Shown here one piece after another: positions 492 through 60,617 of a stretch of 64,000 nucleotides of DNA. The position numbers and the translations under genes are program-made. The stretch spans positions 124,001-188,000 of the IMG/VR virus record IMGVR_UViG_3300005337_000441. One strand, 5' to 3'. The notes under the pieces are model-generated. The model was not told the origin of the DNA. It did not search any database and saw nothing but the letters and a program-made list of their open reading frames with translations. Every line of letters begins with the position of its first letter. The stretch's first letter is position 1.

Positions 492-508
492 TGACGGCAT
501 AGACGGCA

Positions 509-538
509 TAGAGCCTGGGCCCCAAAGCCCAGGCTCTA
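509..538. terminator. Bidirectional hairpin terminator between convergent genes
   Basis: TAGAGCCTGGGC-CCCAAA-GCCCAGGCTCTA perfect 12-bp stem; T-run at about 546-553 on +. Confidence 0.85.
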
Positions 539-911: not shown

Positions 912-922
912 CACATATACTT
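912..922 (+). promoter_or_regulatory. Putative phage promoter motif CACATATACTT upstream of nvRNAP beta
   Basis: Exact 11-mer also at 15840-15850 and 56393-56403, each upstream of a + strand gene run. Confidence 0.55.
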
Positions 923-1000: not shown

Positions 1001-3106
1001 ATGTCGCAAGTTAATGAACTTCGTCCGGAGTTTTGCGGTATTCATTCCGTGAACTTCTTCCCCGCAGGGGACTCCGGTAGCCGTGCCGTCATGTTCGGCG
1101 GCCATTTCTCTCAACGTCTGATCCTGGAGCACTCCACCCCGCAGCGCATTCAAACCGGTGTTGCCCAAGAGCTGGGCAAGTTCACGTTCGGCATCAAGAT
1201 GCCCGAGAACGGCCGCATCATCAAGATCCTGCAACGCTATCCGGCGGGCGTGTCCATCGATTCGCTGGACTACAACCCCGAAACCCTGGTCATCTACGAG
1301 ATCGACGAGACGCACGTCATCGACTGCTTCACGATCCCCAACTTCCAGAGCTTCCACCAGACTTTCGGCTACCGGCTCGTCTTCAAGGACGCGATGAGCC
1401 TGTTGCGACCCAATGCCTTCATCGGCAAGGGCACGGTCTTTGCTGACAGCCCTGGCGTCGGTGACAACCAGAACTACATGTTCGGTGTCGAGCTGGAAAC
1501 TGCCTTCATGTCGCTGCCTGCGACCGCTGAGGACGGCATCATCATCTCGGAAGACGCGCTGCCGAAGCTGAAGTTCCACACCTTCGAAACCCGCAAGGTC
1601 AACTTCGGGGCCAACCAGTTCCCGCTGAACCTGTACGGGACGCTGGAACACTACAAGCCCTTCCCCGATATCGGTGAGCAAATCCGTGAAGACGGCCTGC
1701 TCATGATGTTCCGCTCCTACGACAGCGACCTGGCTCCTGTCGAGATGAGCATCTACGACACGATGGAGCCGGACTTCTACTTCGACACCGCCCTGTACAC
1801 CAAGCCGGGCAAGGGTCGCATCGTGGACATCCAGGTCATCTCCAACAACAACCCCAACCGTCAGCTCCCCGAGCTCATGGCCACTCAGCTGCGCAAGTAC
1901 GAGCGGGCCAAGGTGCGGTTCCACCAGGAGATTGTCGACACCGAGAAGGCGCTGCGTGCCGCGCACAAGAAGAAGTTCGGCACCAACAAGCTCTCGATCA
2001 CGCCACGCTTTCACCGTCTGGTGGAAGAAAGCATGGCCATCGTCAACCATCCGCTTCCCGGAGACAAGCAACGCCACAGCCTACAACTGCTGGAGCGCAA
2101 AGAACCGCTGGACGAATTCCGCATCGAGTTCACGATCGAGTACGAGGTGATCCCAGGCATCGGCAACAAGATGACCGACACCCACGGCGGCAAGGGCGTG
2201 ATCTGCAAGATCGAGAAGGCTGAAAACATGCCTGTCGACGCTGCAGGCAACCGCGCCGAGATCGTCATGGACCCTATCGCCACGCTCAACCGCATGAACG
2301 AGGGCCGAAGCTACGAGCACTTCCACAGCGGTGCCGCACGCGACGTCTCCGTTGAGGTGCGCCGCCAGCTCGGCGTGGGCAAGGGTATCTCGATGGAGCG
2401 ACTGGAGCTCATGGATCCGGACTTGGTGATCAACGCACACCAGTTCCTCCTGCGCTACTACGATCTGATCTCGACCAAGCAGTACGAGTTCTTCCGGGAT
2501 CTTCCCAAGGAGAAGAAGTACGAGCATGTCCTGAACGTCGTCAACGAAGGCATCTTCCCGTTCATCCCGGTGGACAACGACAAGGATCCGATCGAGATGG
2601 TCAAGAACGTGAACCGGGTGTTCAATCCGGTCTACGGTCCCGTGTCCTATGTCGGTAACTCCGGCGTGAGGCACACGACTGTCGAGAGGAGTCGCATTGC
2701 GCCGATGTACTTCATGCTGCTGGACAAGACTGCCACGGAATGGTCTTCGACCGCGACGGGCAAGCTCCAGCACTTCGGTGTGCTCACGACGATGACCAAG
2801 TCGGAGAAGTTCTCGCTACCCTTCCGCAACAACCCGACGCGCACCATCGGCGAGTCGGAAGCACGGATCTACGATGCGGTGACGGAACCCTACGTCGTCG
2901 CTGAGCTGCTGGATCGTTCCAACAATCCTGCGGCTCAGAAAAACATCGTCTGGAACCTGCTCAACGCGTTGCAGCCGGGCAACATCGACAACATCGTCGA
3001 TCGCAACTTCATTCCGTACGGCAATTCGCGCTCCCTCCAGAACGTCAAACACATCTTCAACTGCGCGGGGTTCACCACTAGCTGGACCCCTGAGAAGCTC
3101 AAGTAA
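1001..3106 (+). CDS. rpoB: Non-virion RNA polymerase beta subunit, C-terminal part (phiKZ gp71-73-like)
   Basis: GNKMTDTHGGKGVI matches beta GDKxxGRHGNKGV; EDGIIISE, RAEIVMDP..RMN.G and TIGESE motifs of beta. Confidence 0.92.
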   Translation: MSQVNELRPEFCGIHSVNFFPAGDSGSRAVMFGGHFSQRLILEHSTPQRIQTGVAQELGKFTFGIKMPENGRIIKILQRYPAGVSIDSLDYNPETLVIYEIDETHVIDCFTIPNFQSFHQTFGYRLVFKDAMSLLRPNAFIGKGTVFADSPGVGDNQNYMFGVELETAFMSLPATAEDGIIISEDALPKLKFHTFETRKVNFGANQFPLNLYGTLEHYKPFPDIGEQIREDGLLMMFRSYDSDLAPVEMSIYDTMEPDFYFDTALYTKPGKGRIVDIQVISNNNPNRQLPELMATQLRKYERAKVRFHQEIVDTEKALRAAHKKKFGTNKLSITPRFHRLVEESMAIVNHPLPGDKQRHSLQLLERKEPLDEFRIEFTIEYEVIPGIGNKMTDTHGGKGVICKIEKAENMPVDAAGNRAEIVMDPIATLNRMNEGRSYEHFHSGAARDVSVEVRRQLGVGKGISMERLELMDPDLVINAHQFLLRYYDLISTKQYEFFRDLPKEKKYEHVLNVVNEGIFPFIPVDNDKDPIEMVKNVNRVFNPVYGPVSYVGNSGVRHTTVERSRIAPMYFMLLDKTATEWSSTATGKLQHFGVLTTMTKSEKFSLPFRNNPTRTIGESEARIYDAVTEPYVVAELLDRSNNPAAQKNIVWNLLNALQPGNIDNIVDRNFIPYGNSRSLQNVKHIFNCAGFTTSWTPEKLK

Positions 3107-3122
3107 AGCGGAAACCCAACCC

Positions 3123-5159
3123 ATGCTCAAACTCCATGTGCGGGACCTCGTCCCGCTGGATCCGCAAGAAGTGGCAACCCGGCTGCTTCACGAGGAGGAG
3201 ATCTACCTCACCTTTGATGACGGTGAGGAGATCAAAACCAACGGGCGTCGGACGTTCTACTCGTCGTATGCGTGGGAGTTTCATCGGCAGTACCCCGGGG
3301 TGCCGCTGACGAAGTCCCACCATGTCGACTTTGTGCTGGGTGGCAAGCCACTCAACGCGTCCACGCACATCCAGCTGCTGGAGAACATCAGCAAGGATGT
3401 GATCTTTGTGCACCAGCTGTTCTTGCCGGAGCAAAAGGAAAACGTTCTCTCGCTGATCTATTCGGCCACGAACCGCATCCACAACGAAGTCACGCAGTTC
3501 GCCGAAGGGCACGTGACAACGATCGACCTGTTGGACTTCATCGAAGTCGTGGATCATCCTGCCATCAAGGCGGCGATTGCAGAGCTGCCCAAGAACGTCC
3601 ATTCCAAGGACCCGGCCATCTCTCGCGTCTACGACAACGTCCTGAAGATCATCCAAACCCATGCGGACTTCGCCCAGAACAATCTGGCGCGGGCTGTGCG
3701 GGCCAAGATCGTCAACAACAACCAGGTCTTGCAGTGCGTGGCGTTCCGGGGTTTCCCCTCGGAAGTGGACGGCAAAGTGCTCAACGAGCCGATCCTGTCG
3801 AACTTCACGGTCGGCAACGTTCGGCTCTACGACTACGTGGCTGAGTCCCGTTCGGCGGCAAAGTCGCACTACTTTGCTGAAGCACCGCTGGAAAAGGCCG
3901 AGTACTTCTCACGCCGACTGCAGTTGCTCACGATGGTGATCGAGCGGATCCATTACAAGGATTGCGGTTCGCAGCGCTACGTGAACTGGATCATGCGTCC
4001 GCCCGAGCTCGACGACACGGGCAAGGTCTTGTACCCTGGTGACCTGAAGTTCATGGTCGGCAAGTACTACTTGGGTGAGGACGACACGACGCTCAAGGAG
4101 ATCAAGGGCGACGAGACGTACCTCTACAACAAGATGATCCGCATGCGCTCGGTGCTCATGTGCGAAGATCCGGACCCGCATGCAATCTGCTCCACGTGCT
4201 TTGGCGCTCTCTCGCAGAACGTCAGCAAGTATGTGAACATCGGTCACCTCTGCGCGGCCACGATGACCCAGCAGACCTCGCAGTCGGTGCTCTCGACCAA
4301 GCACTTGGACTCCTCCAGTCGCTCCACCGACATCGTCTTGAACGAGTTCACGAGCCGCTACTTCACAACCACGCCCTCCAAGAGTGCCTACCTGGTGCGC
4401 AAGGAGTTCCGCAACAAGGACGTCAAGTTCATCATCAACCGAGACCAAGCAGTCGGTCTCGCAGACGTGATGGCCCTGGAAAACCTGGACAGCCTCTCGC
4501 TCACCCGCATCAGCTCGATCGCCGAGATCGACTTCCAGTTCACGGAGAAGGACGGTGGAGAAATTCACACCATCCCCGTGCGTCTGGAGCAGGACAAGCG
4601 CAAGGCCGTCTTCACGATGGAGTTCCTGAAGCACCTCAAGCGCAACCGCTGGCAGACCGACAACCGCGGCAATTTCGTGTTCGACCTGAAGGACTGGAAC
4701 TTCAACGTTCCGCCCCTGATGCTCCCGGACATGGAGTACAGCTTCTCGGATCACTCCGAGGAGATCGCCTCGATGATCGAGTCCTCGGTGGAAAACATCA
4801 CCGAGCGCTCCAAGCCCAACTCTCCCGCAACGACCTTGCAGGAGCTTTTCGCCAAGGTCAACGGCAAGCTGAGCGTTAACGTCGCGTTGCTTGAAGTGAT
4901 TCTGGCCGCGGTGATGATCCCTGAGCAAGGTTCCTACGGAATCGGGCGCGGGAATCCCAACGCGGTGCTGGGCGTGGCAGGGCAACTCATTAAGAATCGG
5001 TCGCTGTCCAATGCGTACGCGTTCCAAGATCAGCTGGAAACCATTCTCGCTCCGAAGAACTTCTTCGTCGAGGGTCGTCCCGACTCGGTCTTTGACGTGT
5101 TCATCGCCCCGGACCTGGTCGTGGCTTACCAAGAGCAGCGCAAGCAGCTGAAAAGTTAA
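3123..5159 (+). CDS. rpoC: Non-virion RNA polymerase beta' subunit, C-terminal part (phiKZ gp74-like)
   Basis: Zn-site DCGS...RSVLMC...ICSTCFG and trigger-loop-like GHLCAATMTQQTSQSVLSTKH. Confidence 0.9.
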   Translation: MLKLHVRDLVPLDPQEVATRLLHEEEIYLTFDDGEEIKTNGRRTFYSSYAWEFHRQYPGVPLTKSHHVDFVLGGKPLNASTHIQLLENISKDVIFVHQLFLPEQKENVLSLIYSATNRIHNEVTQFAEGHVTTIDLLDFIEVVDHPAIKAAIAELPKNVHSKDPAISRVYDNVLKIIQTHADFAQNNLARAVRAKIVNNNQVLQCVAFRGFPSEVDGKVLNEPILSNFTVGNVRLYDYVAESRSAAKSHYFAEAPLEKAEYFSRRLQLLTMVIERIHYKDCGSQRYVNWIMRPPELDDTGKVLYPGDLKFMVGKYYLGEDDTTLKEIKGDETYLYNKMIRMRSVLMCEDPDPHAICSTCFGALSQNVSKYVNIGHLCAATMTQQTSQSVLSTKHLDSSSRSTDIVLNEFTSRYFTTTPSKSAYLVRKEFRNKDVKFIINRDQAVGLADVMALENLDSLSLTRISSIAEIDFQFTEKDGGEIHTIPVRLEQDKRKAVFTMEFLKHLKRNRWQTDNRGNFVFDLKDWNFNVPPLMLPDMEYSFSDHSEEIASMIESSVENITERSKPNSPATTLQELFAKVNGKLSVNVALLEVILAAVMIPEQGSYGIGRGNPNAVLGVAGQLIKNRSLSNAYAFQDQLETILAPKNFFVEGRPDSVFDVFIAPDLVVAYQEQRKQLKS

Positions 5160-5210: not shown

Positions 5211-6779
5211 ATGACGGCTGTCCATTTTGACCCCATGTGCCGGATAGACATCTATTCGCACTTCTTCACGATCACCAAATACACGCCCCGCATTGCGGGC
5301 ATCGTTTACAAGTTCTCCTGGAAGTACACCCAATCCGACTTCTCCCGTGGCAATGGTCGCGGTGGTCCGGTCGAGAAAGTACCCGGCAGAACTTACGGTG
5401 TTTACAACAAGTTCCTGATGGAGTTCCGGTTTCACATCGGACAACTCAAGGAAATGATGGAGCTCTTCTCTCGGGAGATGATCGAGCCCCATCTGTACGA
5501 ATGGCATGTGCACGAGCTCTATGAGCCCGCCACGATGGCAGTCTTGCCCAACGAAGCGTACAACCCGTACGACTACCAGTTGCGTGCGATCGACTTCATC
5601 TTGGCGCCCGATGAGGAAGGAGATCTTCGGACTCGCTTCATCGCCATGCCCACGGGAACAGGCAAATCCCTGACCGCTGTAAGGTCTACTACCGATGAGC
5701 GCTGCCGCACCCGCACGCTCATCTGCATGCAAGCCAAGTACCTGAAGAAGTGGCCCCGTGACGTCACGGAGTACACAACTGTCAGTGGTAAGCGCGTGGT
5801 GGTCCTGAAGGGTTCCAAGGAAATCCGCGCTGTCATCAGCATTGCGCGTGATGGTGACGTGCCTTACGACTACATCCTGGTCTCCATGACCACGATGCTC
5901 AACTACATCAAGGACTTCGAGGACAACCCGGAGTTGTGCCTGGAGATGTATGGACTGCATCCCCAGAAGTTCTGCGAACTCCTAGGAATCGGCCAAGTCA
6001 TCGTGGACGAAGCACATGAGAACCTGCACGGCGTGTACCGCCTGATGGTTTATACGCATGTGCCTAAATTCATTGGCCTGTCTGGCAGCCTCTTGCACTT
6101 GGATCCCTTCATCGAACGCATGCAACACATGATGTTCCCGAAGGAGATGCGGTTCAACGAGATCAAGATGAAGAAGTACATTCAGGCGTACGCAATCGCG
6201 TACTCCTTCAATGACTTCGAGGGATCGAAGATCCGTACCCAGGAGTATGGCTCCAGCACCTACTCACAAACCGCATTCGAGCAATCGATCCTGAAAAAGA
6301 AAGATCTCCTCCAGAAGTACATGGAGATGATCGACTACAACGTAGAGTTCGCTTACCTGAGGGACTATCAACCTGGGGACAAGCTGGTCATTTACGCGGG
6401 TCGCATCGAGATGTGCACGGCAATCGCCGCGTACTTCAAGAAACGCTATCCCAAGCTCGACGTGCGCCGCTACGCAGACGGTGACCCGTACGAGAACCTC
6501 CTGGATGCCGACATCCGGGTGACGACCATCCTCTCCGGCGGCACGGCTCACGACATCCCGAACCTTCGCGTGGTGATCATGACCAATGCCATCCAGTCGG
6601 CTCAGGCCAACATCCAGGTGCTCGGGCGCCTGCGTGAACTCAAAGACCGAGATGTCAAGTTCGTCTACCTCTACTGCGAACAGGTCAAACGCCACGTGGA
6701 CTACCACCACCAGCGCAAAGATCTGTTCAAAGAACGGGTGGCAGGCATCAAAGACTACCGTTGTCCAGTCCTTGTGTAA
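5211..6779 (+). CDS. Superfamily 2 DExH helicase (phiKZ gp75-like)
   Basis: Walker A PTGTGKS, motif II VDEAH, GLSGS motif III, QVLGRLR motif VI. Confidence 0.9.
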   Translation: MTAVHFDPMCRIDIYSHFFTITKYTPRIAGIVYKFSWKYTQSDFSRGNGRGGPVEKVPGRTYGVYNKFLMEFRFHIGQLKEMMELFSREMIEPHLYEWHVHELYEPATMAVLPNEAYNPYDYQLRAIDFILAPDEEGDLRTRFIAMPTGTGKSLTAVRSTTDERCRTRTLICMQAKYLKKWPRDVTEYTTVSGKRVVVLKGSKEIRAVISIARDGDVPYDYILVSMTTMLNYIKDFEDNPELCLEMYGLHPQKFCELLGIGQVIVDEAHENLHGVYRLMVYTHVPKFIGLSGSLLHLDPFIERMQHMMFPKEMRFNEIKMKKYIQAYAIAYSFNDFEGSKIRTQEYGSSTYSQTAFEQSILKKKDLLQKYMEMIDYNVEFAYLRDYQPGDKLVIYAGRIEMCTAIAAYFKKRYPKLDVRRYADGDPYENLLDADIRVTTILSGGTAHDIPNLRVVIMTNAIQSAQANIQVLGRLRELKDRDVKFVYLYCEQVKRHVDYHHQRKDLFKERVAGIKDYRCPVLV

Positions 6780-6788
6780 CTGCTAGGC

Positions 6789-6842
6789 CAGAGTGAGGAG
6801 GGGTGATCCCCTCCTCACTCTGTGCTGTGCTTGTCTTTTTTT
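6789..6842 (+). terminator. Intrinsic terminator after helicase
   Basis: CAGAGTGAGGAGGGG-TGAT-CCCCTCCTCACTCTG followed by TGCTGTG and a T-run. Confidence 0.85.
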
Positions 6843-6845
6843 GAC

Positions 6846-7934: not shown

Positions 7935-8473
7935 TCCATTCCAGTATGTTGCTGCTGCTCATGAACGGTTGCCAGATCCGCTGTGAGCCCATTGTCGTGC
8001 ACGGCAGTGTTTTGCATCGCGGCATGACGCTGGAGTATCGGTTCACCAAGGAGACGTTTGATCACCTGATCGATCGTCCCAAGGAGATGAGTTTCTTCAT
8101 CGCGGAGAAGCTCTCGGACAAGATTCTGCCGATGCTTGAAGTCTGCCAGCAGTCCAGGATCGTTGATCGTCCCGAGCGTGTGGATCAATCCGTGGCTCAA
8201 TTGAGCACCGCGATGCTCTCCGTCATCTCTGGGATCATCATCGATTACCGCAAGGTCATCAATGAGCTTGAGAGTTGTGTGACGGCTAACCAGGCATATT
8301 TCGGAAAGTTCTTGGTCCGAATGCCGGACCCCAACGCCGTTCACATGAGTCTCACGTTCCAACTCATCGTCAACAGTCACGAACTTCACATCAAAGGTGA
8401 ACTCTCAGCGCACGACGAAGCCGAGTACATCAGCTTCAACGTGATCAACGAACGCGTAGCAATTCGTTACTGA
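7931..8473 (+). CDS. Hypothetical protein
   Basis: ATGA overlap with upstream stop; ends at terminator. Confidence 0.7.
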   Translation: MIHSSMLLLLMNGCQIRCEPIVVHGSVLHRGMTLEYRFTKETFDHLIDRPKEMSFFIAEKLSDKILPMLEVCQQSRIVDRPERVDQSVAQLSTAMLSVISGIIIDYRKVINELESCVTANQAYFGKFLVRMPDPNAVHMSLTFQLIVNSHELHIKGELSAHDEAEYISFNVINERVAIRY

Positions 8474-8491
8474 GCGAGGAGACAGCATAAA

Positions 8492-8526
8492 CCCCCAGGA
8501 GACTCCTTCACGGGAGCTCCTGGGGG
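8492..8526. terminator. Bidirectional hairpin terminator
   Basis: CCCCCAGGAG...CTCCTGGGGG stem between convergent genes. Confidence 0.8.
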
Positions 8527-8567: not shown

Positions 8568-9059
8568 TCAAGAAGGCTTACCTTGCGCCGCAGCACCCAG
8601 TGCTTTCTCAATGTCGCGGATGTCATTGCCCTTCTTGGTGATCCATCGCTCTGCTTTCTCGAACATCATTGCGACGATGTCAGTAGGCAGTTCCAGAAAT
8701 TCCACGAAGGTGAGTCCGAAGTACTCACGGACGTTGAGTTGATGGTAGCGGTCCATCAAGTCATCCAGCCTTGAGTCCTGGTTGATGTCCTCCGCATCGT
8801 GGAACGCCACAGATGCCAAAGGGCGGTAACCTTGGGGACTCAAATGGTTGTAGATGCCAAACCGGGTCTCAAAGAGATCCTGCATGGCAATTTTCATGTC
8901 GACAGACTCATCGACTTTCGGCAGTCTACCCAGCGACTCAGAAACGAAGTCATCCCCGTCGATGTAAGCAAGTCTATCTTGCTCCCATGCGAAGCGGATG
9001 TCTCCGATTCTTATCGTGTCGCGATTCTTTCGAGTCTCTGGGTAATCAATCCGAAAAAA
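8568..9059 (-). CDS. Tail/baseplate assembly chaperone-like C-terminal ORF (T4 gp51 / lambda gpT-like); reached by -1 frameshift or from ATG 8897
   Basis: LDDLMDRYHQLNVREYFGLTFVEFLELP resembles gp51/gpT-type helical chaperones; overlaps the upstream ORF across a slippery site. Confidence 0.6.
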   Translation of the reverse strand, partial: FFRIDYPETRKNRDTIRIGDIRFAWEQDRLAYIDGDDFVSESLGRLPKVDESVDMKIAMQDLFETRFGIYNHLSPQGYRPLASVAFHDAEDINQDSRLDDLMDRYHQLNVREYFGLTFVEFLELPTDIVAMMFEKAERWITKKGNDIRDIEKALGAAAQGKPS

Positions 9060-10561
9060 ACTTGTGCCACATCCAGAGGAATGATGTTCGTGTGATGCGG
9101 GAACTTGTCGTTGCCGGTGTGGTCGGTGCCGCACTGCGGACACTTGAACACCGGGATACCGATCACGCTCGTCGTGGAGGTGGAGATGTAGTTCACGACT
9201 TCCAGCAGGAAGCGGTCACGGATCTCGTCGTCGGCGGTGAGCAGAGCGAGCATCTCGTCGACCGACTCGCGGTCATCGGTGATGTTGCCCTGGAATTCGA
9301 TCGACTCGATCCAGTGTGCGTACTGGCGCAGCGCCGAAGCCTGGCCTTGCAGCGTGATGGTGTTGTTGCGTTCGTTGGTCGACGCATCGATGCCGAGTGC
9401 ACGGTCGACGTTCTCGACGATGCCATTGATCCACTGGTGACCAGAGGAGATGTACTCGGTGATCGAGGGCGAACGCAGCGTGAAGGACACTTCATTCTGC
9501 TTGCCTTCGTTGACCGTGATGCGCTTGTGCTGCAGGCGAGCGAGCTCTTCCTTGTAGCGCTTGATCTCGGCCAGCGTCTTGAGCTTGGGCTGGCGCGAAG
9601 ACATGTGCGTCTTCTGCCATTCCGTCAGCGTCTTCATGTTGGTCCACTGAAGCTTCATGACGTTCAGCGTTTCCTTGAGCACGAAGTTGCACTTCTCGGG
9701 ATTGCTGATGCAGGCACGCTCGTAGAGGAAGCCGCGCGGATACATCGTGCAGACGAAACCCCACAGCAGGCTCGGAATGTCCTGGCAGACCACATGGTCA
9801 CGCAGGTTTTCCTTGTTGACGTCTTCGGTCTTGGTCGTCAGGTTGTAGACGTGGTCCAGAGCGAAGTCGACCAGGCGGTCGATGGTGAACGCCGTCATGT
9901 TGGAGTACATGAGGCCGTAGGAGGAGCGACCGAACTTGATCTTGTCGGCCATCATCGAGCGGTTGAGCTCGACGATCTCGGCTTCTGTGGGCGGCTTGAA
10001 CGTCACCCAGATGCCCGAATGCCACAGAGGCGCCTGAAACACCGTGCCGTGACCCAGGTGAGAGACCAGACGCAGCAGGGCGCGCTCACCCTTGATGTTC
10101 TGACCTTGGACTTCCTGGAACTGCGGCACCGAGCCGATCAGCGGACGACCACTGACTTGGTTGTTCTGGCGGAATTCGGAATCGGGCTCGGACATGGCAG
10201 CCACCAGAACTTCGTTCATGGTGTTGTAGTCCATGCCTTCACCCAGCACAGCCGACCAGCGACGAGCGTCAGGACTGTCGGTGAGCTTGATGTTGGGCGT
10301 GTGATCGATCGCTCGCACGGCCTTGCTGTCCAGGTCGCTGGGCAGGGCAAGTTGTTCGCCGCTGTCGCGCATCTCGGGCATGTTGACCGAGAAGTCCTGG
10401 ATGGCGTTGGTCTCGGCCACGACGACGACAGGTTCAGCAGCAGCCGGAGGCGGCACTTCACCGGACGGCGCAGGAGCAGCGTCAGGCGTCTCGTCCAGGA
10501 TCAGCGGAGGAACTTCTTCACCGGGCGGAGCCTTGTTCAGGGAGGGGTCTTCAGTGCTCAT
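9011..10561 (-). CDS. Putative baseplate hub assembly / tail assembly chaperone (T4 gp26-like), Zn-finger motifs
   Basis: VTFKPPT, DIPSLLWGFVCTMYPRG..RAC....C, FKCPQCG; acidic Pro-rich N-terminus. Confidence 0.6.
   Translation of the reverse strand: MSTEDPSLNKAPPGEEVPPLILDETPDAAPAPSGEVPPPAAAEPVVVVAETNAIQDFSVNMPEMRDSGEQLALPSDLDSKAVRAIDHTPNIKLTDSPDARRWSAVLGEGMDYNTMNEVLVAAMSEPDSEFRQNNQVSGRPLIGSVPQFQEVQGQNIKGERALLRLVSHLGHGTVFQAPLWHSGIWVTFKPPTEAEIVELNRSMMADKIKFGRSSYGLMYSNMTAFTIDRLVDFALDHVYNLTTKTEDVNKENLRDHVVCQDIPSLLWGFVCTMYPRGFLYERACISNPEKCNFVLKETLNVMKLQWTNMKTLTEWQKTHMSSRQPKLKTLAEIKRYKEELARLQHKRITVNEGKQNEVSFTLRSPSITEYISSGHQWINGIVENVDRALGIDASTNERNNTITLQGQASALRQYAHWIESIEFQGNITDDRESVDEMLALLTADDEIRDRFLLEVVNYISTSTTSVIGIPVFKCPQCGTDHTGNDKFPHHTNIIPLDVAQVFFGLITQRLERIATR
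9053..9059 (-). promoter_or_regulatory. Candidate -1 ribosomal frameshift heptamer T TTT TTC
   Basis: Codons GTT TTT TTC in frame of 9011-10561; the -1 frame AGT TTT TTT CGG is the open 8568 frame. Confidence 0.65.
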
Positions 10562-15516: not shown

Positions 15517-15565
15517 AAAGGCTCCCGAGGACCATCTAGGTCTTCGGGGCCTTTTGTCACCGTCT
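15517..15565 (+). terminator. Hairpin terminator
   Basis: AAAGGCTCCCGAGGACC-ATCTA-GGTCTTCGGGGCCTTT then TGTCACCGTCT. Confidence 0.75.
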
Positions 15566-15839: not shown

Positions 15840-15850
15840 CACATATACTT
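15840..15850 (+). promoter_or_regulatory. Putative promoter motif CACATATACTT
   Basis: Exact repeat of 912-922 motif; AT-rich gap before accessory genes. Confidence 0.55.
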
Positions 15851-18241: not shown

Positions 18242-18733
18242 ATGAGCGACACATCCAAAAACTGGCTTCATGGCCATCTGGACGAAAGAATGCGCAACAA
18301 GGCTGACGAATACTTCAGAAGCCTTGTCAGTCTGGCGATGATTGGCTTCAACGCAGAGGCGGAACAACTCTTCCCGCGCGTCGTGGCTGCAAACAACGTC
18401 CTGCTGTCCACCAGGAGCAACGTCAAGTCGGCAACGATCGTCATCCCGTCAGCGCAATTCATGGGCGACCGTGCAGACCTGCCTGACAAGCTGCACGTCG
18501 CGGGCGACGAGTACTTCAGCAAGTACATGATCAGTTTCGAGGAAGGTAGAACCCGGCGGTGCTTCTACTATTTCTACGACACCGGCCTGAACGCGATGGC
18601 TCTCATGGTCCTTCCCAAGAAGAAGGAATACCATTTCGAGTTCACCATTTGCGGCACTCCTGAACGAGTGGACGAATACGTCAAGGGCTACGTGGAGATC
18701 TGTCAGCAACTTGGCGTGCGTTTGAACATGTGA
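18242..18733 (+). CDS. Hypothetical protein
   Basis: GAGG RBS; ends at terminator. Confidence 0.75.
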   Translation: MSDTSKNWLHGHLDERMRNKADEYFRSLVSLAMIGFNAEAEQLFPRVVAANNVLLSTRSNVKSATIVIPSAQFMGDRADLPDKLHVAGDEYFSKYMISFEEGRTRRCFYYFYDTGLNAMALMVLPKKKEYHFEFTICGTPERVDEYVKGYVEICQQLGVRLNM

Positions 18734-18740
18734 CGGCATA

Positions 18741-18790
18741 CATCCCAGGGAGCCCGAAAGCTCCCTGGGATGATGTGCTGTTTTTTTTTT
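18741..18790. terminator. Bidirectional terminator
   Basis: CATCCCAGGGAGC-CCGAAA-GCTCCCTGGGATG, T10 run on +. Confidence 0.9.
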
Positions 18791-24304: not shown

Positions 24305-24312
24305 ACAGCAAA

Positions 24313-24354
24313 AGACCCCCGGGGACCGCGAGGCCTCCGGGGGTCTATGCCGTC
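24313..24354. terminator. Bidirectional terminator
   Basis: AGACCCCCGGGG...CTCCGGGGGTCT then ATGCCGTC. Confidence 0.8.
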
Positions 24355-24358
24355 TTGC

Positions 24359-27289
24359 TTACGGGATACGGTAGAAGTTCACCGTGACGTCTTCCTTGAT
24401 GATCAGGCTTCCGTCGGGTTGCAGGACCAAGATCTTCTTGAGACACAGACGATTTTGTTCGTCTGCGAGACTCAGGATCTTGTAGTTCTTCTCACCACCC
24501 AGGCCACTCATGGCCGTGCTTTCCACGCTATTGCCGTACATCTCGACAAGAGCCAGAGTGATTTCGGTGGTGTTCACGACCGCACCGCTGATGTACTGAT
24601 CCAGCAGTTTGACCGTGTTGTCGTAGAGTTGTTGACGCACCGCAGAGTCGTTGTAGACCTCGGACTTCACGTACAGGTCGATGTTGAGCGACTGCTCCGA
24701 AGGCAGGATGTCCTGACCTTGGTCTTGCGTGAAGACCTTGACCTGACCCAGCGTGGTCTTGGGGTAGAAGAAGATACGGGTCTGTTCCAGCAGCGTCTTC
24801 TGCACACCGGCCACGTCGTCCACGATCCAGGAGTCCAGCACGCCCACGAGCTCTTGGTTGTAAGCCAAGAACGCCGGATCGTCCACGAAGTACTGGCGAC
24901 CGTCCACGAAGAGCATGTCGACTTCCTTGTTGACCGTGAGGTCAGAGACGACGACAGGCTTACCGTTGGCGTCCAACACCACGTCACCCTTCTTGTGCTT
25001 GTAGATCTGGTTACCTTCATTGTCCAGCACCGGGTCACCCGCGCTGTGCAGTTTCAGATAGACGATCTGTTCGTTTTCGATCTTGAAGATCGAGCCAGTC
25101 ACGGGATCGATGTCGTAGACGTCGTCCTCGTAGTACATCGGCACGTCGAACTGGTAGCGTTGGTAATCCTGGCCTGCGGCGAAGGAGCGCGAACGCGTCC
25201 AGAGTGCCTTCAGTGCCAGACCCAGTTGCAGATCCAGCGTCTCATGCGTGTTGGCCACAGCGCCGTCGGGCAGCAAGAACTTGCCCAGCAGTGCGTCTGC
25301 ATCGTCGGGCACGAAGTCCGCATCGATGGAGGTGGTCGCATGGAAGATGTGGAACTGGTGCTCCAGGTTGATCCAGTTGTCGATCGGATCGGTACCGAAC
25401 ATGCTGGCGTTGGTGATCGTCAGGTTGTCGGCCGAGTTCAGGTCGTAGTTGGTCAGGATGTCAAACGTCCACATCCGTTCGTTGGTGGTGGCGTCCGTAC
25501 CAGCCAGCACGCCGTTGATGTAGGCCATGCGCGTCTCACCCACCGGGTAGTAGGCCAGTTGCGCAAAGACGGTGCCATCGTCGAGCTGCTTGTAGTAGTT
25601 GCCCGATGCCGTGATGATCGACAGGCGGTAGCCGCCCGGGATCTTGGCGATCGAGTACGAACCGGTATTGACCGGCAGTTTGAGCGTCTGGTTCTGAGAG
25701 ATAAAGCTCAGATCCGTGGCCAGCGGGTAGTCCAGGTCGTACGCACGCACCGCGAACTCGTTGTCGGAGTCGTCCAGCACGTAGTAGTACGGGCTGTACA
25801 GGTACTTCTTGGAGTTCACCTCCACGACCAGATCGCTCTTGGCCATGGATTTCAGCGCTGCGATTTGAGCCGACGTCAGGATCACAAGGATCCCGTTGTT
25901 GTTCAGGTACAGGTTGGACGACAGGATCGTGCAACGCTCGCCGTTAGAGGCCACCGTGTCCAGCGTTTGCAGGAACGCCATGTTCGTGACGAACGGTGAG
26001 ATGCCGATGTTGGCCGAAGTGGCCAGTTTCTCGTTCATCGGCTTCGGGAGCTTTTGCGTGGCCAAGAAGATACGGTTCGTGATCGTGTCGATGTTCTTCA
26101 CGAGCGTGAAACCGTTGGCTTCGATCTTGGCTTGAGCTTGGGTCGGTGTGATCGGGATGATCTGCGGACCCGTGCTGTGCATGATCACACGCTGGCGCAG
26201 CGTGGCGAAGTCGATGGCGTTGGCACCACCCGTCACCAGGTCTCGGCTGAAGGGGTAGTACGAGATGTCGGCCATGGCAGCCGTGAACTCGTTCAGGTCC
26301 CGTTCTTCGTCCACCGGTTGCAGCAGCAGCTGGAATTCCGACACCTTGTAGTTGGACAGGTTCACCGTGAGGGAACCCTTGGATGTGTAGATGTCGAAAC
26401 GAATCTCACCCGTGAGCACCCCGCTGTCCAGGTAGAGCATCGGGATCGTCACGTTCACGTAACCCGTGAAGACCTTGGCCACCGTGGTCGGCGTGTTCAG
26501 GTCATAGACCTGGTCAGTATGGGTGACGTTGATCTCCACCCACTTGTCGCCAGTGGCGGTGTTGCGGTAGTACGCCCGCATCAAGTAGAACTGATCCGTG
26601 TACTGGATGTCTTGGCTGAAGACCTGCGCGGCCTGCAACGGGTAGTTGGTGGAGGCGATTGCGAACTGGTAGACCGGCACGTCGAAGAAGAGCCAGCCCA
26701 CTTGGCTCGCGTCGTAGCGCACCAGCGGGGTAATGATGTTGCTTTGCAGGTCATCGATCGGAGAGGCGATCGAGGGGTCGTAGCTGATCTGGATCATGCC
26801 GCTTTCGTACTTGCGGATGTCGATCGGATACAGCAGCGTGAAGGTGTATTCACCCACCACGAACTTGGAGTCCCGTGGGAAAGTCGCCTTGTAGCAGCTC
26901 TCCGTGGGATCCCAGACCATCTTGTTTTGCACGTCGGGCAAGTTCATCGAGATCGTGAACACCGCCTTGGAAGGCGATGCAAAACGATTGATGTAGTCCT
27001 TGTCAGACATGTGTCGGTACAGATCCGACTCGGTTTGGGCCAGGTCGGGATACTGCTTAGGCAGGATCGAGAGTGCCTCGTTCACAGCGATGGCCGTGTT
27101 CACGGCGCTCGATTCCAACAGGAACACGAACGGGCTGGTGGGATCCACCACGTTGACAGCACCCTCGGTCACTTCGTCCAGGTAGTCGAGCACGACACGC
27201 TGCAAAGCCGAGGGGTTGTACTTGTAGAGGTCCAGGTTCCCCATGAGGGTCTGGATGGATACGGATTTGGAGGCGACGATATCAGCCAT
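24359..27289 (-). CDS. Large baseplate structural protein (phiKZ gp87-like, T4 gp6/baseplate J-like wedge)
   Basis: 976 aa beta-rich; N-terminal VVDPTSPFVFLLE and TGGANAIDFATLRQRVI resemble baseplate wedge proteins; inferred from recall and synteny. Confidence 0.7.
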   Translation of the reverse strand: MADIVASKSVSIQTLMGNLDLYKYNPSALQRVVLDYLDEVTEGAVNVVDPTSPFVFLLESSAVNTAIAVNEALSILPKQYPDLAQTESDLYRHMSDKDYINRFASPSKAVFTISMNLPDVQNKMVWDPTESCYKATFPRDSKFVVGEYTFTLLYPIDIRKYESGMIQISYDPSIASPIDDLQSNIITPLVRYDASQVGWLFFDVPVYQFAIASTNYPLQAAQVFSQDIQYTDQFYLMRAYYRNTATGDKWVEINVTHTDQVYDLNTPTTVAKVFTGYVNVTIPMLYLDSGVLTGEIRFDIYTSKGSLTVNLSNYKVSEFQLLLQPVDEERDLNEFTAAMADISYYPFSRDLVTGGANAIDFATLRQRVIMHSTGPQIIPITPTQAQAKIEANGFTLVKNIDTITNRIFLATQKLPKPMNEKLATSANIGISPFVTNMAFLQTLDTVASNGERCTILSSNLYLNNNGILVILTSAQIAALKSMAKSDLVVEVNSKKYLYSPYYYVLDDSDNEFAVRAYDLDYPLATDLSFISQNQTLKLPVNTGSYSIAKIPGGYRLSIITASGNYYKQLDDGTVFAQLAYYPVGETRMAYINGVLAGTDATTNERMWTFDILTNYDLNSADNLTITNASMFGTDPIDNWINLEHQFHIFHATTSIDADFVPDDADALLGKFLLPDGAVANTHETLDLQLGLALKALWTRSRSFAAGQDYQRYQFDVPMYYEDDVYDIDPVTGSIFKIENEQIVYLKLHSAGDPVLDNEGNQIYKHKKGDVVLDANGKPVVVSDLTVNKEVDMLFVDGRQYFVDDPAFLAYNQELVGVLDSWIVDDVAGVQKTLLEQTRIFFYPKTTLGQVKVFTQDQGQDILPSEQSLNIDLYVKSEVYNDSAVRQQLYDNTVKLLDQYISGAVVNTTEITLALVEMYGNSVESTAMSGLGGEKNYKILSLADEQNRLCLKKILVLQPDGSLIIKEDVTVNFYRIP

Positions 27290-33903: not shown

Positions 33904-33943
33904 AGGGACGGGGCCTTCGGGCTCCGTCCCTTTTTGTCCGTCT
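33904..33943 (+). terminator. Intrinsic terminator
   Basis: AGGGACGGGGCC-TTCG-GGCTCCGTCCCT TTTTGTCCGTCT. Confidence 0.9.
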
Positions 33944-35657: not shown

Positions 35658-35668
35658 GACATATACTG
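35658..35668 (+). promoter_or_regulatory. Putative promoter variant GACATATACTG
   Basis: Shares ACATATACT core; preceded by AAAATTTCC; about 60 nt before gene 35726. Confidence 0.45.
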
Positions 35669-37473: not shown

Positions 37474-37518
37474 CCCCGGGAGAGCTTCGGCTTTCCTGGG
37501 GTCTTATGCCGTCTTTTT
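37474..37518 (+). terminator. Intrinsic terminator
   Basis: CCCCGGGAGAGC-TTCG-GCTTTCCTGGGG then TCTTATGCCGTCTTTTTT. Confidence 0.85.
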
Positions 37519-37564
37519 TCTGTTCAGTCCTCAGATCCTATGATTACCATGACAGGAGGCTTGA

Positions 37565-38938
37565 ATGCCAATTGCTGGCCAAAAACCGACATCGGAACCG
37601 GAAGTCCGAGTTGAACTTCCCGCTGTCGAGCCAACAAACTACAAGTCGGTCATTTATGACGACAACAACGTTCCTCTGCAATCGCTTCTCGCGTTCGTAG
37701 AAGGCGCTCCCTGGCCCGTAGACTACTACGCCCAGGTCAAGGCACAACACAACGATCTGCGTGACGTGGATCCCGGCCAGCAAGCCGTCTACCAACAGTA
37801 CCAGAAGTTCGTGGGTCTGGAGATCCGCGTGGACCAGGCTCTGACCACGTCGTTCGATTCCAACTCCGCCAACTCCACGGTGACGGGCAGCGGCAACATG
37901 TATCCGTTCATGAAGGTGAACGTGGGGGATGTGTTCGTGACGGATGTGGCCGACAACAAGCGGGCCATGTTCCGTTTGACGGAAGTCAGCCGCCGCACCT
38001 TCAACCGTGACAGTGCCTGGACCATCGAGTACACGATGATCGGTTACGTGGACGGCAGTGCCGACAACCAAGCACAGTTCGCTGCGCTGGAGAACGGCAC
38101 CATCCGTACGTACTACTTCAGCAAGGATCGCTTGCTGGAGGGTCTGCAGCCGTTCATCAAGAGCGAAGAGTACGCCAACGTCACCAACCTGCGTTCGGTC
38201 TACGAGGATCTGATCCAGTACTACTTCCAGAACATCTTCAACCTGAAGTACTCCACGCTCGTGGTGCCAGGTCAAGACTACGCGATCTACGACATGCATC
38301 TGGTCGAGTTCCTGATGAAAATCGTGGACACGGAAGATGCGGATCAGATCAAGCACGTCAAGCGCCTGACTGCGGACAACGACATCTACCTGCAGCAACC
38401 CGACCTGTGGTCGATGCTGTACGAGCGTGACTACCCGCAGCGCTTGCGCTGCAACCAGGTCTTTGGCCTGGTGGGACGCAACTACTTCAACCGCAACACG
38501 TTCTTGACGGGGTTCCGTTACAGCAACGTGCAGTACCTGGTCTACCCCAACGATCCGGACACCTCGCTCAACATCGAGGGCACGTGCGGTGCCAAGCCGA
38601 TCGACCTGCAAGAGATCATCAACACCACGCCGTTCAAGGGCCAGGATTACTCGGACGTGGACAACACGTACGTGGACGATCTGAAGTCCTACGACATCAT
38701 CCACGAGGTGCTCTCGGACGACCGCTACGTTCTGTCTGCGGCGTTCTATGACGACACGGACGACAAGTCGCTGCTGGAGATCCTGGTGCGTGACTACATG
38801 AACAGAGCGGCGATCGATCTCCCCAAGCTCCTCGCCTGTTGCAACGTGTTCAAGAAGTGGAAACGCCTGGAGCAGTTCTACTACGGGCCGCTCCTGCTCA
38901 CGCTGCTGCGTGAAGCCTACAGGGCTCAGTACACCTGA
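37565..38938 (+). CDS. Virion structural protein (neck/head-tail connector-like, inferred)
   Basis: AGGAGG RBS; LLAFVEGAPWPVDYY..., VGDVFVTDV pattern; structural block. Confidence 0.7.
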   Translation: MPIAGQKPTSEPEVRVELPAVEPTNYKSVIYDDNNVPLQSLLAFVEGAPWPVDYYAQVKAQHNDLRDVDPGQQAVYQQYQKFVGLEIRVDQALTTSFDSNSANSTVTGSGNMYPFMKVNVGDVFVTDVADNKRAMFRLTEVSRRTFNRDSAWTIEYTMIGYVDGSADNQAQFAALENGTIRTYYFSKDRLLEGLQPFIKSEEYANVTNLRSVYEDLIQYYFQNIFNLKYSTLVVPGQDYAIYDMHLVEFLMKIVDTEDADQIKHVKRLTADNDIYLQQPDLWSMLYERDYPQRLRCNQVFGLVGRNYFNRNTFLTGFRYSNVQYLVYPNDPDTSLNIEGTCGAKPIDLQEIINTTPFKGQDYSDVDNTYVDDLKSYDIIHEVLSDDRYVLSAAFYDDTDDKSLLEILVRDYMNRAAIDLPKLLACCNVFKKWKRLEQFYYGPLLLTLLREAYRAQYT

Positions 38939-42704: not shown

Positions 42705-42744
42705 ACAGGAGGGGGCCTTCGGGCTCCCTCCTGTTTATGCCGTC
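42705..42744 (+). terminator. Intrinsic terminator
   Basis: ACAGGAGGGGGCC-TTCG-GGCTCCCTCCTGT then TTATGCCGTC. Confidence 0.85.
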
Positions 42745-56280: not shown

Positions 56281-56320
56281 GCGGGAGCAGGGGAAACCCT
56301 AGCTCCCGCTTTTGCCGTCT
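56281..56320 (+). terminator. Intrinsic terminator
   Basis: GCGGGAGC-AGGG-GAAA-CCCT-A-GCTCCCGC then TTTTGCCGTCT. Confidence 0.85.
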
Positions 56321-56392: not shown

Positions 56393-56403
56393 CACATATA
56401 CTT
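56393..56403 (+). promoter_or_regulatory. Putative promoter motif CACATATACTT
   Basis: Third exact copy; heads the nucleotide-metabolism operon. Confidence 0.55.
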
Positions 56404-60565: not shown

Positions 60566-60575
60566 ACGCCAACTG

Positions 60576-60617
60576 GACCTGGAGCTGTCAAGGCTCTGGG
60601 TCCTTTTGGTCCGTCAA
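60576..60617 (+). terminator. Intrinsic terminator
   Basis: GGACCTGGAGC-TGTCAAG-GCTCTGGGTCC then TTTTGGTCCGTCAA. Confidence 0.8.

What the first reader, a model, noticed from the sequence alone, without database searches (positions are those of the whole stretch)
493..538. Conserved sequence motif T(A/G/T)TGC(C/T)GT directly after terminator hairpins, often replacing the U-tract
Seen, reading in the direction of the terminating gene: TATGCCGTC twice in tandem (minus, 493-510), minus 18732-18740, plus 24346-24354, 37505-37513, 42736-42744; TTTGCCGTC 56311-56319; TTATGCTGTC minus 8481-8490; TGTGCTGT at 6821 and 18774; TTTTGCTGT minus 24305-24313; TGTCCGTC 33935, TGTCACCGTC 15555, GGTCCGTC 60608. 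Stems differ in sequence but the flank is conserved, and several copies point antisense into the next gene, so they are not simply TATG late promoters. Inference: a sequence-specific termination/pause or 3'-end processing signal for the phage RNA polymerases.
Basis: partly seen in the sequence, partly recalled or inferred. Interest (0 to 1): 0.6.

Follow-up and report, generated by a model that had tools for sequence, protein, structure and literature searches.

The report
Conserved flank of phage terminator hairpins
The short sequence TATGCCGTC that follows RNA hairpins at gene ends in this giant phage is real and far beyond chance. It is the GC-rich version of a terminator motif already mapped in phage phiKZ, and how the phage polymerases read it is still unknown.

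Summary
TATGCCGTC occurs 6 times in the window against 0.19 expected, and 18 times in the 215.8-kb genome. Seventeen of those 18 copies lie 0-3 nt after a GC-rich hairpin, 30-68 nt past a same-strand stop codon. Of 69 strong gene-end hairpins, 28 carry T[ATG]TGYYGT in the 3' flank (0.25 expected). Sixteen of the 20 best matches have no T-tract.

The genome is a phiKZ-like jumbo phage from a rhizosphere metagenome. The motif matches the published phiKZ terminator consensus (hairpin plus YTTATKYYGT, 61 mapped terminators) and motif A of 201phi2-1. It is therefore a new member of a known kind.

What is new here:
- The flank survives in 53-58% GC relatives (this phage, FLC9, RP12, Xoo-sp14) although U-richness is lost. 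It is weak in EL and absent from SPN3US hairpin flanks; AR9 shows no genome-wide excess.
- Its final GT lies 8-10 nt after the stem, where bacterial terminators release RNA.
- It is preferred at convergent gene junctions in five phages.

A promoter role is unlikely as the main function: half the copies point antisense, and a separate promoter motif exists. No RNA data exist for this phage, so the mechanism is inferred.

The parts
493..510 (-). Two tandem copies of TATGCCGTC, 3' of the hairpin on the minus strand, pointing into the end of the + gene that stops at 491
   Evidence: in the fold the first copy pairs partly with upstream bases and the second stays single-stranded
509..538 (.). 12-bp GC-rich hairpin between convergent genes (+ gene ends at 491, - gene ends at 559). 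On the + strand it is followed by a T6 run after 8 nt
   Evidence: as RNA with flanks -41 kcal/mol, z = -5.45
6789..6843 (+). 15-bp hairpin (6789-6822), then TGTGCTGT (6821-6828), then a T7 run. Terminator of the gene at 5211-6779
8481..8526 (-). Hairpin (about 8492-8526) followed by TTATGCTGTC (8481-8490) after the minus-strand ORF ending at 8568. Convergent with the + gene ending at 8473
15524..15564 (+). Hairpin (15524-15548) followed by the weak variant TGTCACCGTC (15555-15564). The minus-strand flank reads TTTGTGCTGT
18732..18790 (.). Two-way terminator between convergent genes. Hairpin 18741-18772; minus flank TATGCCGTC (18732-18740, overlapping the stop of the + gene); plus flank TGTGCTGT (18774-18781) followed by a T10 run
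24305..24354 (.). Two-way terminator between convergent genes. Hairpin 24316-24343; plus flank TATGCCGTC (24346-24354) facing the 976-aa virion gene; minus flank TTTTGCTGT (24305-24313). A near-identical 51-nt cassette lies elsewhere in the genome
33904..33942 (+). 12-bp hairpin with a UUCG loop (33904-33931), then TTT and TGTCCGTC (33935-33942)
37474..37519 (+). Hairpin with a UUCG loop (about 37474-37501), then TATGCCGTC (37505-37513), then a T6 run. The next + gene starts at 37565
42705..42744 (+). 13-bp hairpin with a UUCG loop (42705-42734), then TATGCCGTC (42736-42744)
56281..56319 (+). Hairpin (about 56281-56309), then TTTGCCGTC (56311-56319)
60575..60615 (+). Hairpin (60575-60603), then TTTT and GGTCCGTC (60608-60615). 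Weak variant: only the CCGTC half is kept

Best explanation
TATGCCGTC, more loosely T-A/T/G-T-G-Y-Y-G-T-(C), is the conserved 3' flank of the phiKZ-type transcription terminator. A stable GC-rich RNA hairpin at a gene end is followed directly by this 8-9-nt element. In this 57% GC phage the element stands where a bacterial terminator has its U-tract.

Shown here: position, orientation, selection of the hairpin at the RNA level, conservation of the flank across distant relatives while the stems change, and identity with the consensus of experimentally mapped phiKZ and 201phi2-1 terminators.

Inferred: the flank is transcribed into the RNA-DNA hybrid and bubble and acts as a pause and release signal for the phage's own multisubunit RNA polymerases. 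The proximal U(U)AU gives the weak first pairs. The invariant G-U lies 8-10 nt after the stem, in the place of the purine-U 'bubble-edge' dinucleotide at which bacterial polymerases release RNA. The full consensus is kept where complete termination matters most, between convergent genes, often on both sides of one hairpin.
For: - Enrichment next to gene-end hairpins: 28 of 69 against 0.25 expected.
- Seventeen of 18 exact copies follow a same-strand stop codon; 16 lie 30-68 nt past it.
- In co-directional settings the hairpins are more stable as sense RNA in 40 of 46 cases (p = 8e-8) and equally stable on both strands at convergent junctions. UUCG is the commonest loop.
- Published 3'-end mapping gives hairpin plus YTTATKYYGT for 61 phiKZ terminators (PMC10914365) and a like motif for 59 in 201phi2-1 (PMC11512511).
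- In my scan T[ATG]TGYYGT after hairpins numbers 24 against 1.0 expected here, 29/1.2 in phiKZ, 18/0.8 in FLC9, 28/1.3 in RP12 and 22/0.4 in Xoo-sp14. The logos agree.
- The orthologous terminator after the 976-aa virion gene has five different stems in five phages but keeps the flank.
- The final T of the motif lies 8-10 nt after the stem in 89 of 128 cases. This matches the GC(U)7RU geometry of bacterial terminators (bioRxiv 10.64898/2026.05.29.728758).
- Convergent against co-directional junctions: 17/21 against 11/48 here (degenerate motif). For TATG: phiKZ 29/36 against 19/75, FLC9 26/28 against 23/61, RP12 25/28 against 41/89, Xoo-sp14 26/35 against 23/50.
Against: - No transcript data exist for this phage: the only run holding it is a DNA metagenome. 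No 3' end has been seen here.
- The published maps cannot separate termination from processing, and no one has mutated the flank.
- The flank also appears on the antisense side of hairpins between co-directional genes, where no gene needs terminating (phiKZ 27 of 75). The terminator reading then needs antisense transcripts, or stem extension, as a reason.
- Its TATG core is identical to the phiKZ late-promoter element, so a second role is not excluded.
- The distance from the stem varies by a few nt, so the fit to a purine-U release site is suggestive only.
- EL and SPN3US manage without the motif, and AR9 shows no genome-wide excess of it.
Confidence: 0.72

Rival explanations
1. The element is a late promoter for the non-virion RNA polymerase (TATG with the start at G). 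It happens to sit after terminators, so each hairpin-plus-TATG is a stop-and-restart unit.
For: - The phiKZ late promoter is exactly TATG with +1 at the G, and downstream bases matter for its strength (PMC4666361).
- In co-directional cases a same-strand gene starts 24-93 nt downstream, for example at 37505, 42736 and genome 198087.
- TATG is under-represented inside genes on both strands.
Against: - Nine of 18 copies face an opposite-strand gene.
- The motif is most frequent at convergent junctions, where a promoter could only make antisense RNA.
- The phiKZ model late promoter P119L has no upstream hairpin.
- phiKZ late promoters show no conservation after TATG, whereas the terminator flank keeps YYGT.
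- Only 4 antisense RNAs with a defined start were found in phiKZ, although 29 of its 36 convergent terminators carry TATG.
- In G000 several motif copies are followed by a separate promoter-like motif 20-30 nt on.
- The TATG depletion is not specific in this genome: it ranks 29 of 256 four-letter words.
Confidence: 0.12
2. The hairpin plus flank is an RNA processing, stability or protein-binding site. An endonuclease or RNA-binding protein reads the flank, and the mapped 3' ends arise after transcription.
For: - 3'-end maps do not separate termination from processing.
- Where the reverse complement of the motif lies 5' of the hairpin, the two flanks can pair into a stem of about 20 bp. The 201phi2-1 study describes the same as motif B lengthening the stem.
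- The flank is too GC-rich for a classical weak hybrid.
Against: - Most exact copies have no complementary 5' flank, so a long duplex is not required.
- The constant spacing of the GT, 8-10 nt from the stem, equals the length of an RNA-DNA hybrid. That points to an event inside the polymerase.
- Eight 201phi2-1 terminators, chosen to cover the different motifs, stop transcription in uninfected Pseudomonas chlororaphis, so no phage factor is needed there.
Confidence: 0.12
3. The copies are a dispersed repeat, a small palindromic cassette spread by duplication or recombination. The flank is conserved by descent and has no function of its own.
For: A 51-nt cassette is near-identical at two loci whose flanking genes are unrelated. 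Several stems share the same apical sequence.
Against: - Most stems differ in length, sequence and loop while the flank stays.
- The same flank is kept after different stems at an orthologous site in five phages that share under 40% protein identity.
- It is found in phages from 37% to 58% GC.
Confidence: 0.04

Closest known systems
Conserved terminator motif of phage phiKZ (Putzeys et al. 2024, PMC10914365) and motif A of phage 201phi2-1 (PMC11512511)
   Same: A GC-rich stem-loop, often with a UUCG loop, followed directly by (Y)TTATKYYGT. It lies at gene ends, often works in both directions, and belongs to phages that transcribe with their own split multisubunit polymerases. TATGCCGT fits TATKYYGT exactly.
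   Different: Here the flank is GC-rich (G-C-C in the K-Y-Y positions), the leading Ts are often missing, a further C is conserved, and most copies have no U-rich stretch at all. No 3' ends have been mapped for this phage.
Bacterial intrinsic terminator in its recent 'hairpin, U-tract, bubble-edge' form, GC(U)7RU (bioRxiv 10.64898/2026.05.29.728758)
   Same: A hairpin followed by about 9 nt that end in purine-U. The motif's G-T falls 8-10 nt after the stem.
   Different: The seven bases between are U-A-U-G-Y-Y rather than U-rich. A classical weak rU:dA hybrid is therefore absent in the GC-rich phages.
[quoted passage not shown]
   Same: The same four bases.
   Different: Late promoters lie upstream of late genes, have no hairpin and no conserved bases after TATG. 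The terminator flank follows genes, needs a hairpin, keeps YYGT, and often faces antisense.
Pauses set by reading the non-template strand: NusG-dependent TTNTTT pauses in Bacillus (topic of PMC8060035) and sigma70-dependent promoter-proximal pauses (my own knowledge)
   Same: A short sequence in the open bubble holds the polymerase and helps weak terminators. This is the model for how a non-U flank could act.
   Different: Those pauses need NusG or sigma.
T7 RNA polymerase class II pause/termination signal ATCTGTT (my own knowledge)
   Same: A sequence-specific, hairpin-independent stop signal in a phage. The variants here that end in CTGT(T/C) share four bases with it.
   Different: That signal is for a single-subunit polymerase, needs no hairpin, and the main form here (GCCGTC) does not match it.

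Membership tests
phiKZ-type terminator (hairpin + YTTATKYYGT) | Stable GC-rich stem-loop at the site | tested here: met
   Seventeen of 18 exact copies are preceded by a hairpin. Gene-end hairpins reach -17 to -38 kcal/mol. The focal one has z = -5.45.
phiKZ-type terminator (hairpin + YTTATKYYGT) | 3' flank TTATKYYGT starting 0-3 nt after the stem | tested here: met
   TATGCCGT equals TATKYYGT. Offsets and logos are given. The leading T is present in only part of the copies.
phiKZ-type terminator (hairpin + YTTATKYYGT) | Lies downstream of a gene on the transcribed strand, commonly in both directions between convergent genes | tested here: met
phiKZ-type terminator (hairpin + YTTATKYYGT) | Coincides with mapped RNA 3' ends | not testable with these tools
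   The only public run holding this DNA is a rhizosphere DNA metagenome.
phiKZ-type terminator (hairpin + YTTATKYYGT) | Host genome is a phiKZ-like phage with its own split multisubunit RNA polymerases | tested here: met
   Window 1001-5159 matches RNA polymerase beta families and phiKZ 63.3-68.6 kb. The 976-aa virion protein has 290 phiKZ-like relatives.
Canonical bacterial intrinsic terminator | U-rich tract of 7-9 nt directly after the hairpin | tested here: not met
   Sixteen of the 20 best motif sites have no T-run and none has one directly after the stem. The sites are missed by the hairpin-plus-T scan.
Canonical bacterial intrinsic terminator | Purine-U at the release site about 9 nt after the stem | tested here: inconclusive
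   The G-T of the motif lies 8-10 nt after the stem in 89 of 128 cases, but the release site itself is unknown.
phiKZ late promoter | TATG upstream of, and on the same strand as, a late gene | tested here: not met
   Nine of 18 copies face an opposite-strand gene, and 17 of 18 follow a gene end.
phiKZ late promoter | Primary transcript start at the G of TATG | not testable with these tools
   There are no RNA data. The supplementary tables of the phiKZ and 201phi2-1 studies are not held.
Dispersed palindromic repeat (REP/MITE-like) | Many copies of one sequence, alike over the whole element | tested here: not met
   Stems differ in sequence, length and loop. Only one pair is near-identical.

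The most novel reading that the evidence does not exclude
The terminator flank and the late promoter may share TATG because the same reader acts at both. [quoted passage not shown] It then holds the polymerase for a few more steps, up to the G-U, while the hairpin forms. That would give a polymerase-specific termination signal that works without a U-tract.

This reading would explain three things: why the motif survives in GC-rich genomes, why it is favoured where read-through would collide with a convergent gene, and why units that start at the early-type (virion polymerase) promoter tend to end at T-tract terminators instead. The figures for TATG flanks on early-unit against other terminators are phiKZ 5/24 against 43/87, p = 0.02, and this phage 1/13 against 20/56, p = 0.09. 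RP12 shows no difference.
Probability: 0.18. Interest if true: 0.75.

Novelty: new member of a known kind. Interest (0 to 1): 0.4.

Why it matters
How the sigma-less, split RNA polymerases of nucleus-forming jumbo phages stop transcribing is unstudied. The reviews and structure papers I read treat only initiation.

The AT-rich model phages hide the signal inside what looks like an ordinary U-rich tail. This GC-rich relative strips the U-richness away and shows which bases are really kept: T-A-T-G, then G-T five to six bases on.

That gives a defined 9-nt element to mutate in a termination assay. It also gives a way to annotate transcription units in uncultured chimalliviruses, and compact terminators for synthetic biology. 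The preference for convergent junctions and the overlap with the late-promoter word are new, testable leads.

Tried and rejected
- **Close relatives for site-by-site covariation.** There were none in the phage collection by DNA or in viral contigs. The metagenome scan returned only the source contig. I compared distant relatives instead.
- **Supplementary tables** with exact 3'-end positions for phiKZ and 201phi2-1 are not held. Ceyssens 2014 is not held.
- **Rfam and tRNA scans** of the window found nothing.
- **Leaderless start codon.** ORFs begin at the ATG of the motif (150-509 minus, 24347-25999 plus). Both lie opposite the confidently called genes and were not selected by the codon model. 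The 550-aa one shows the composition of an antisense shadow, GC1 0.81 and GC3 0.57.
- **TATG avoidance inside genes** as evidence for an autonomous signal. It is real against codon-shuffled genes but not specific in this genome (rank 29 of 256).
- **DNA cruciform reading.** Sense-strand G-U pairing in 40 of 46 co-directional hairpins argues against it.
- **Early-unit against other terminators.** There is a trend only, and it loses significance within co-directional sites.
- **Not used.** The large protein searches, structure prediction and complex prediction were not needed.

Full report
**What the window is.** The window is bases 124,001-188,000 of a single 215,768-bp contig with 57% GC. The same contig is a JGI metagenome record. 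The only public run that holds it is a rhizosphere DNA metagenome.

The window encodes two adjacent RNA-polymerase beta-family proteins at 1001-5159, a DNA polymerase and many virion proteins. The polymerase genes align with phiKZ 63.3-68.6 kb. I take that region from memory to be the non-virion polymerase genes gp71-73 and gp74.

A 976-aa virion protein has 290 relatives among phiKZ-like phages, none above 40% identity. The nearest are Burkholderia phage FLC9, Xanthomonas phages RTH11 and Xoo-sp14, and Ralstonia phage RP12. This is therefore an uncultured, distant, GC-rich member of the phiKZ-like (chimallivirus) jumbo phages.

I called genes with a codon-usage model trained on the genome's own long ORFs. 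Real genes show GC3 of about 0.8, and antisense shadows show the reverse pattern.

- All listed sites are present.
- The exact 9-mer occurs 6 times in the window against 0.19 expected, and 18 times in the genome.
- Seventeen of the 18 copies lie directly after a GC-rich hairpin.
- TATGCCGT is the most over-represented intergenic 8-mer in the genome.
Beside hairpins it is. Of 69 strong hairpins within 50 nt of a stop codon, 28 carry T[ATG]TGYYGT (0.25 expected) and 31 carry C[CT]GTC (3.1 expected).
- Of the 20 best matches, 16 have no T-run and 4 have one only after the motif.
- A standard hairpin-plus-T scan misses these sites.

**Anatomy.** Sixteen of the 18 exact copies lie 30-68 nt after the stop codon of a same-strand gene. 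A seventeenth, the hairpin-less copy, lies 158 nt after one. Nine copies (eight sites) then face a gene on the other strand.

Between co-directional genes the hairpins fold better as sense RNA than as antisense RNA in 40 of 46 cases. Between convergent genes the two strands fold equally well. UUCG is the commonest loop. The hairpins are therefore selected as RNA, on the transcribed strand or strands.

At convergent junctions the motif or a variant usually flanks the hairpin on both sides. Examples are 18732-18790 and 24305-24354. Often one side adds a T-run.

The motif's first T starts 0-3 nt after the stem. This puts its last T 8-10 nt after the stem in 89 of 128 cases pooled over five phages.

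[quoted passage not shown] The same was found for 59 terminators of 201phi2-1, where a second, upstream motif lengthens the stem (PMC11512511). TATGCCGT is an exact instance of TATKYYGT.

I confirmed this in the sequences themselves. The terminator after the phiKZ major head gene is a UUCG hairpin followed by TTTATGTTGT.

The flank pattern is enriched after hairpins in several phages:

| Phage | Observed | Expected |
|---|---|---|
| This phage | 24 | 1.0 |
| phiKZ | 29 | 1.2 |
| FLC9 | 18 | 0.8 |
| RP12 | 28 | 1.3 |
| Xoo-sp14 | 22 | 0.4 |
| EL | 4 | 0.4 |
| SPN3US | 3 | 0.9 |

201phi2-1 shows a genome-wide excess (41 against 12 in the reversed-pattern control). AR9, EL and SPN3US show none. 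The logos agree: T-A-T-G, two pyrimidines, G, T.

The terminator after the orthologous 976-aa virion gene has five unrelated stems in five phages. It keeps TATG(C/T)T on the 3' side and GGCATAG on the 5' side.

**Promoter or terminator?** The phiKZ late promoter is TATG with the start at G (PMC4666361). It is read in the non-template strand by a pocket of the beta-like subunit (PMC12809450). Six points argue against a promoter as the main role:
- the gene-end position and the antisense orientation of half the copies;
- the strong preference for convergent junctions, seen independently in five phages;
- the absence of a hairpin at the model late promoter P119L;
- the absence of conserved bases after TATG in late promoters, against a kept YYGT here;
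- only four antisense RNAs with a defined start in phiKZ, although 29 of its 36 convergent terminators carry TATG;
- a different motif, CACATATACT with an upstream AAA, which lies 20-80 nt before same-strand genes in most of its copies, all of them on the + strand, sometimes just after a TATGCCGTC terminator.

A second, promoter-like role in co-directional settings cannot be excluded.

**How it probably works (inference).** A flank conserved for 8-9 nt directly after the stem, with a fixed distance equal to the length of an RNA-DNA hybrid, points to an event inside the polymerase. It does not point to trimming back to a hairpin.

In bacteria a recent large-scale study finds that strong terminators read GC(U)7RU. 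Release occurs at the U of a purine-U about 9 nt after the stem, which resembles the elemental pause. Laid on that frame, the phage motif supplies the proximal U(U)AU and the G-U at the release position. The middle is free to follow genome composition: K-Y-Y in phiKZ and G-C-C here.

I therefore read the element as the pause and release half of a hairpin-dependent terminator for the phage's own polymerases. Its full consensus is kept where read-through would run into a convergent gene.

One fact does not fit simply. The motif also appears on the antisense side of hairpins between co-directional genes. It may stop antisense transcripts, or it may lengthen the stem as in 201phi2-1.

**Leads beyond the literature.**
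- GC-rich relatives show which bases are constrained.
- The motif is clade-limited. It is present in the phiKZ, 201phi2-1, RP12, FLC9, Xoo-sp14 and RTH11 group. It is weak in EL and absent from SPN3US hairpin flanks. AR9 was tested only by a genome-wide count, which showed no excess.
- The motif is preferred at convergent junctions.
- Units that begin at the early-type promoter motif tend not to end at TATG-flank terminators: phiKZ 5/24 against 43/87, this phage 1/13 against 20/56, RP12 not significant. Together with the shared TATG, this allows the bolder reading that the non-virion polymerase reads the same word to start and to stop. The support is weak, and I give it about one chance in five.

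**Limits.**
- There is no RNA evidence for this phage and there are no close relatives.
- The exact published 3'-end positions were not available to me.
- My gene calls and hairpin thresholds are home-made.
- Statements about gp numbers of phiKZ, T7 class II signals and sigma-dependent pausing rest on my own knowledge.

Noticed in passing
window 913-920, 15841-15848, 35659-35666, 56394-56401 (core ACATATAC); 18 copies in the genome: A promoter-like motif: AAA, about 10 nt, (G)TCACATATACT(T), about 5 nt, TTG. All copies are on the + strand, and most lie 20-80 nt upstream of + genes, including the polymerase genes at 1001-5159. The core resembles the intergenic TATATTAC of phiKZ and CATATTAC of RP12, so it is probably the early (virion polymerase) promoter class.
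   Followed up: partly
window 24305-24355 and genome 25,305-25,355 (outside the window): Two terminator cassettes of 51 nt differ by one base, although the gene pairs around them show no protein similarity. The terminator unit seems to have been copied or exchanged as a block.
   Followed up: partly
whole genome and relatives (coding regions): TATG is about half as frequent inside genes, on both strands, as in codon-shuffled versions of the same genes (177 against 338 sense, 63 against 175 antisense). It ranks 2nd to 4th most depleted of 256 words in FLC9, Xoo-sp14 and SPN3US, but only 29th here, where other TA-words are as depleted.
   Followed up: partly
genome 71,471-71,479 (outside the window): The only exact TATGCCGTC without a strong hairpin lies about 60 nt after a promoter-like motif and follows only a weak fold (-8 kcal/mol). 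It could be a 5'-leader attenuator like the short-RNA terminators described in phiKZ.
   Followed up: partly
window 1001-3106: This polymerase gene is continuous here. Its phiKZ counterpart aligns in two pieces 1.2 kb apart (63,275-64,453 and 65,672-66,589), consistent with the insertion known in phiKZ.
   Followed up: no
window 33904-33931, 42705-42734; genome 7,810, 193,2xx and others: Several terminator stems share the same top, GGGCC-UUCG-GGCUCC with a G-U or a mismatch.
   Followed up: no
window 8568-9143 (minus): My codon model did not call this 191-aa minus-strand ORF. It ends 40 nt before the motif-bearing hairpin at 8492-8526 and overlaps the end of the called gene at 9011-10561. The gene boundaries here need checking.
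   Followed up: no
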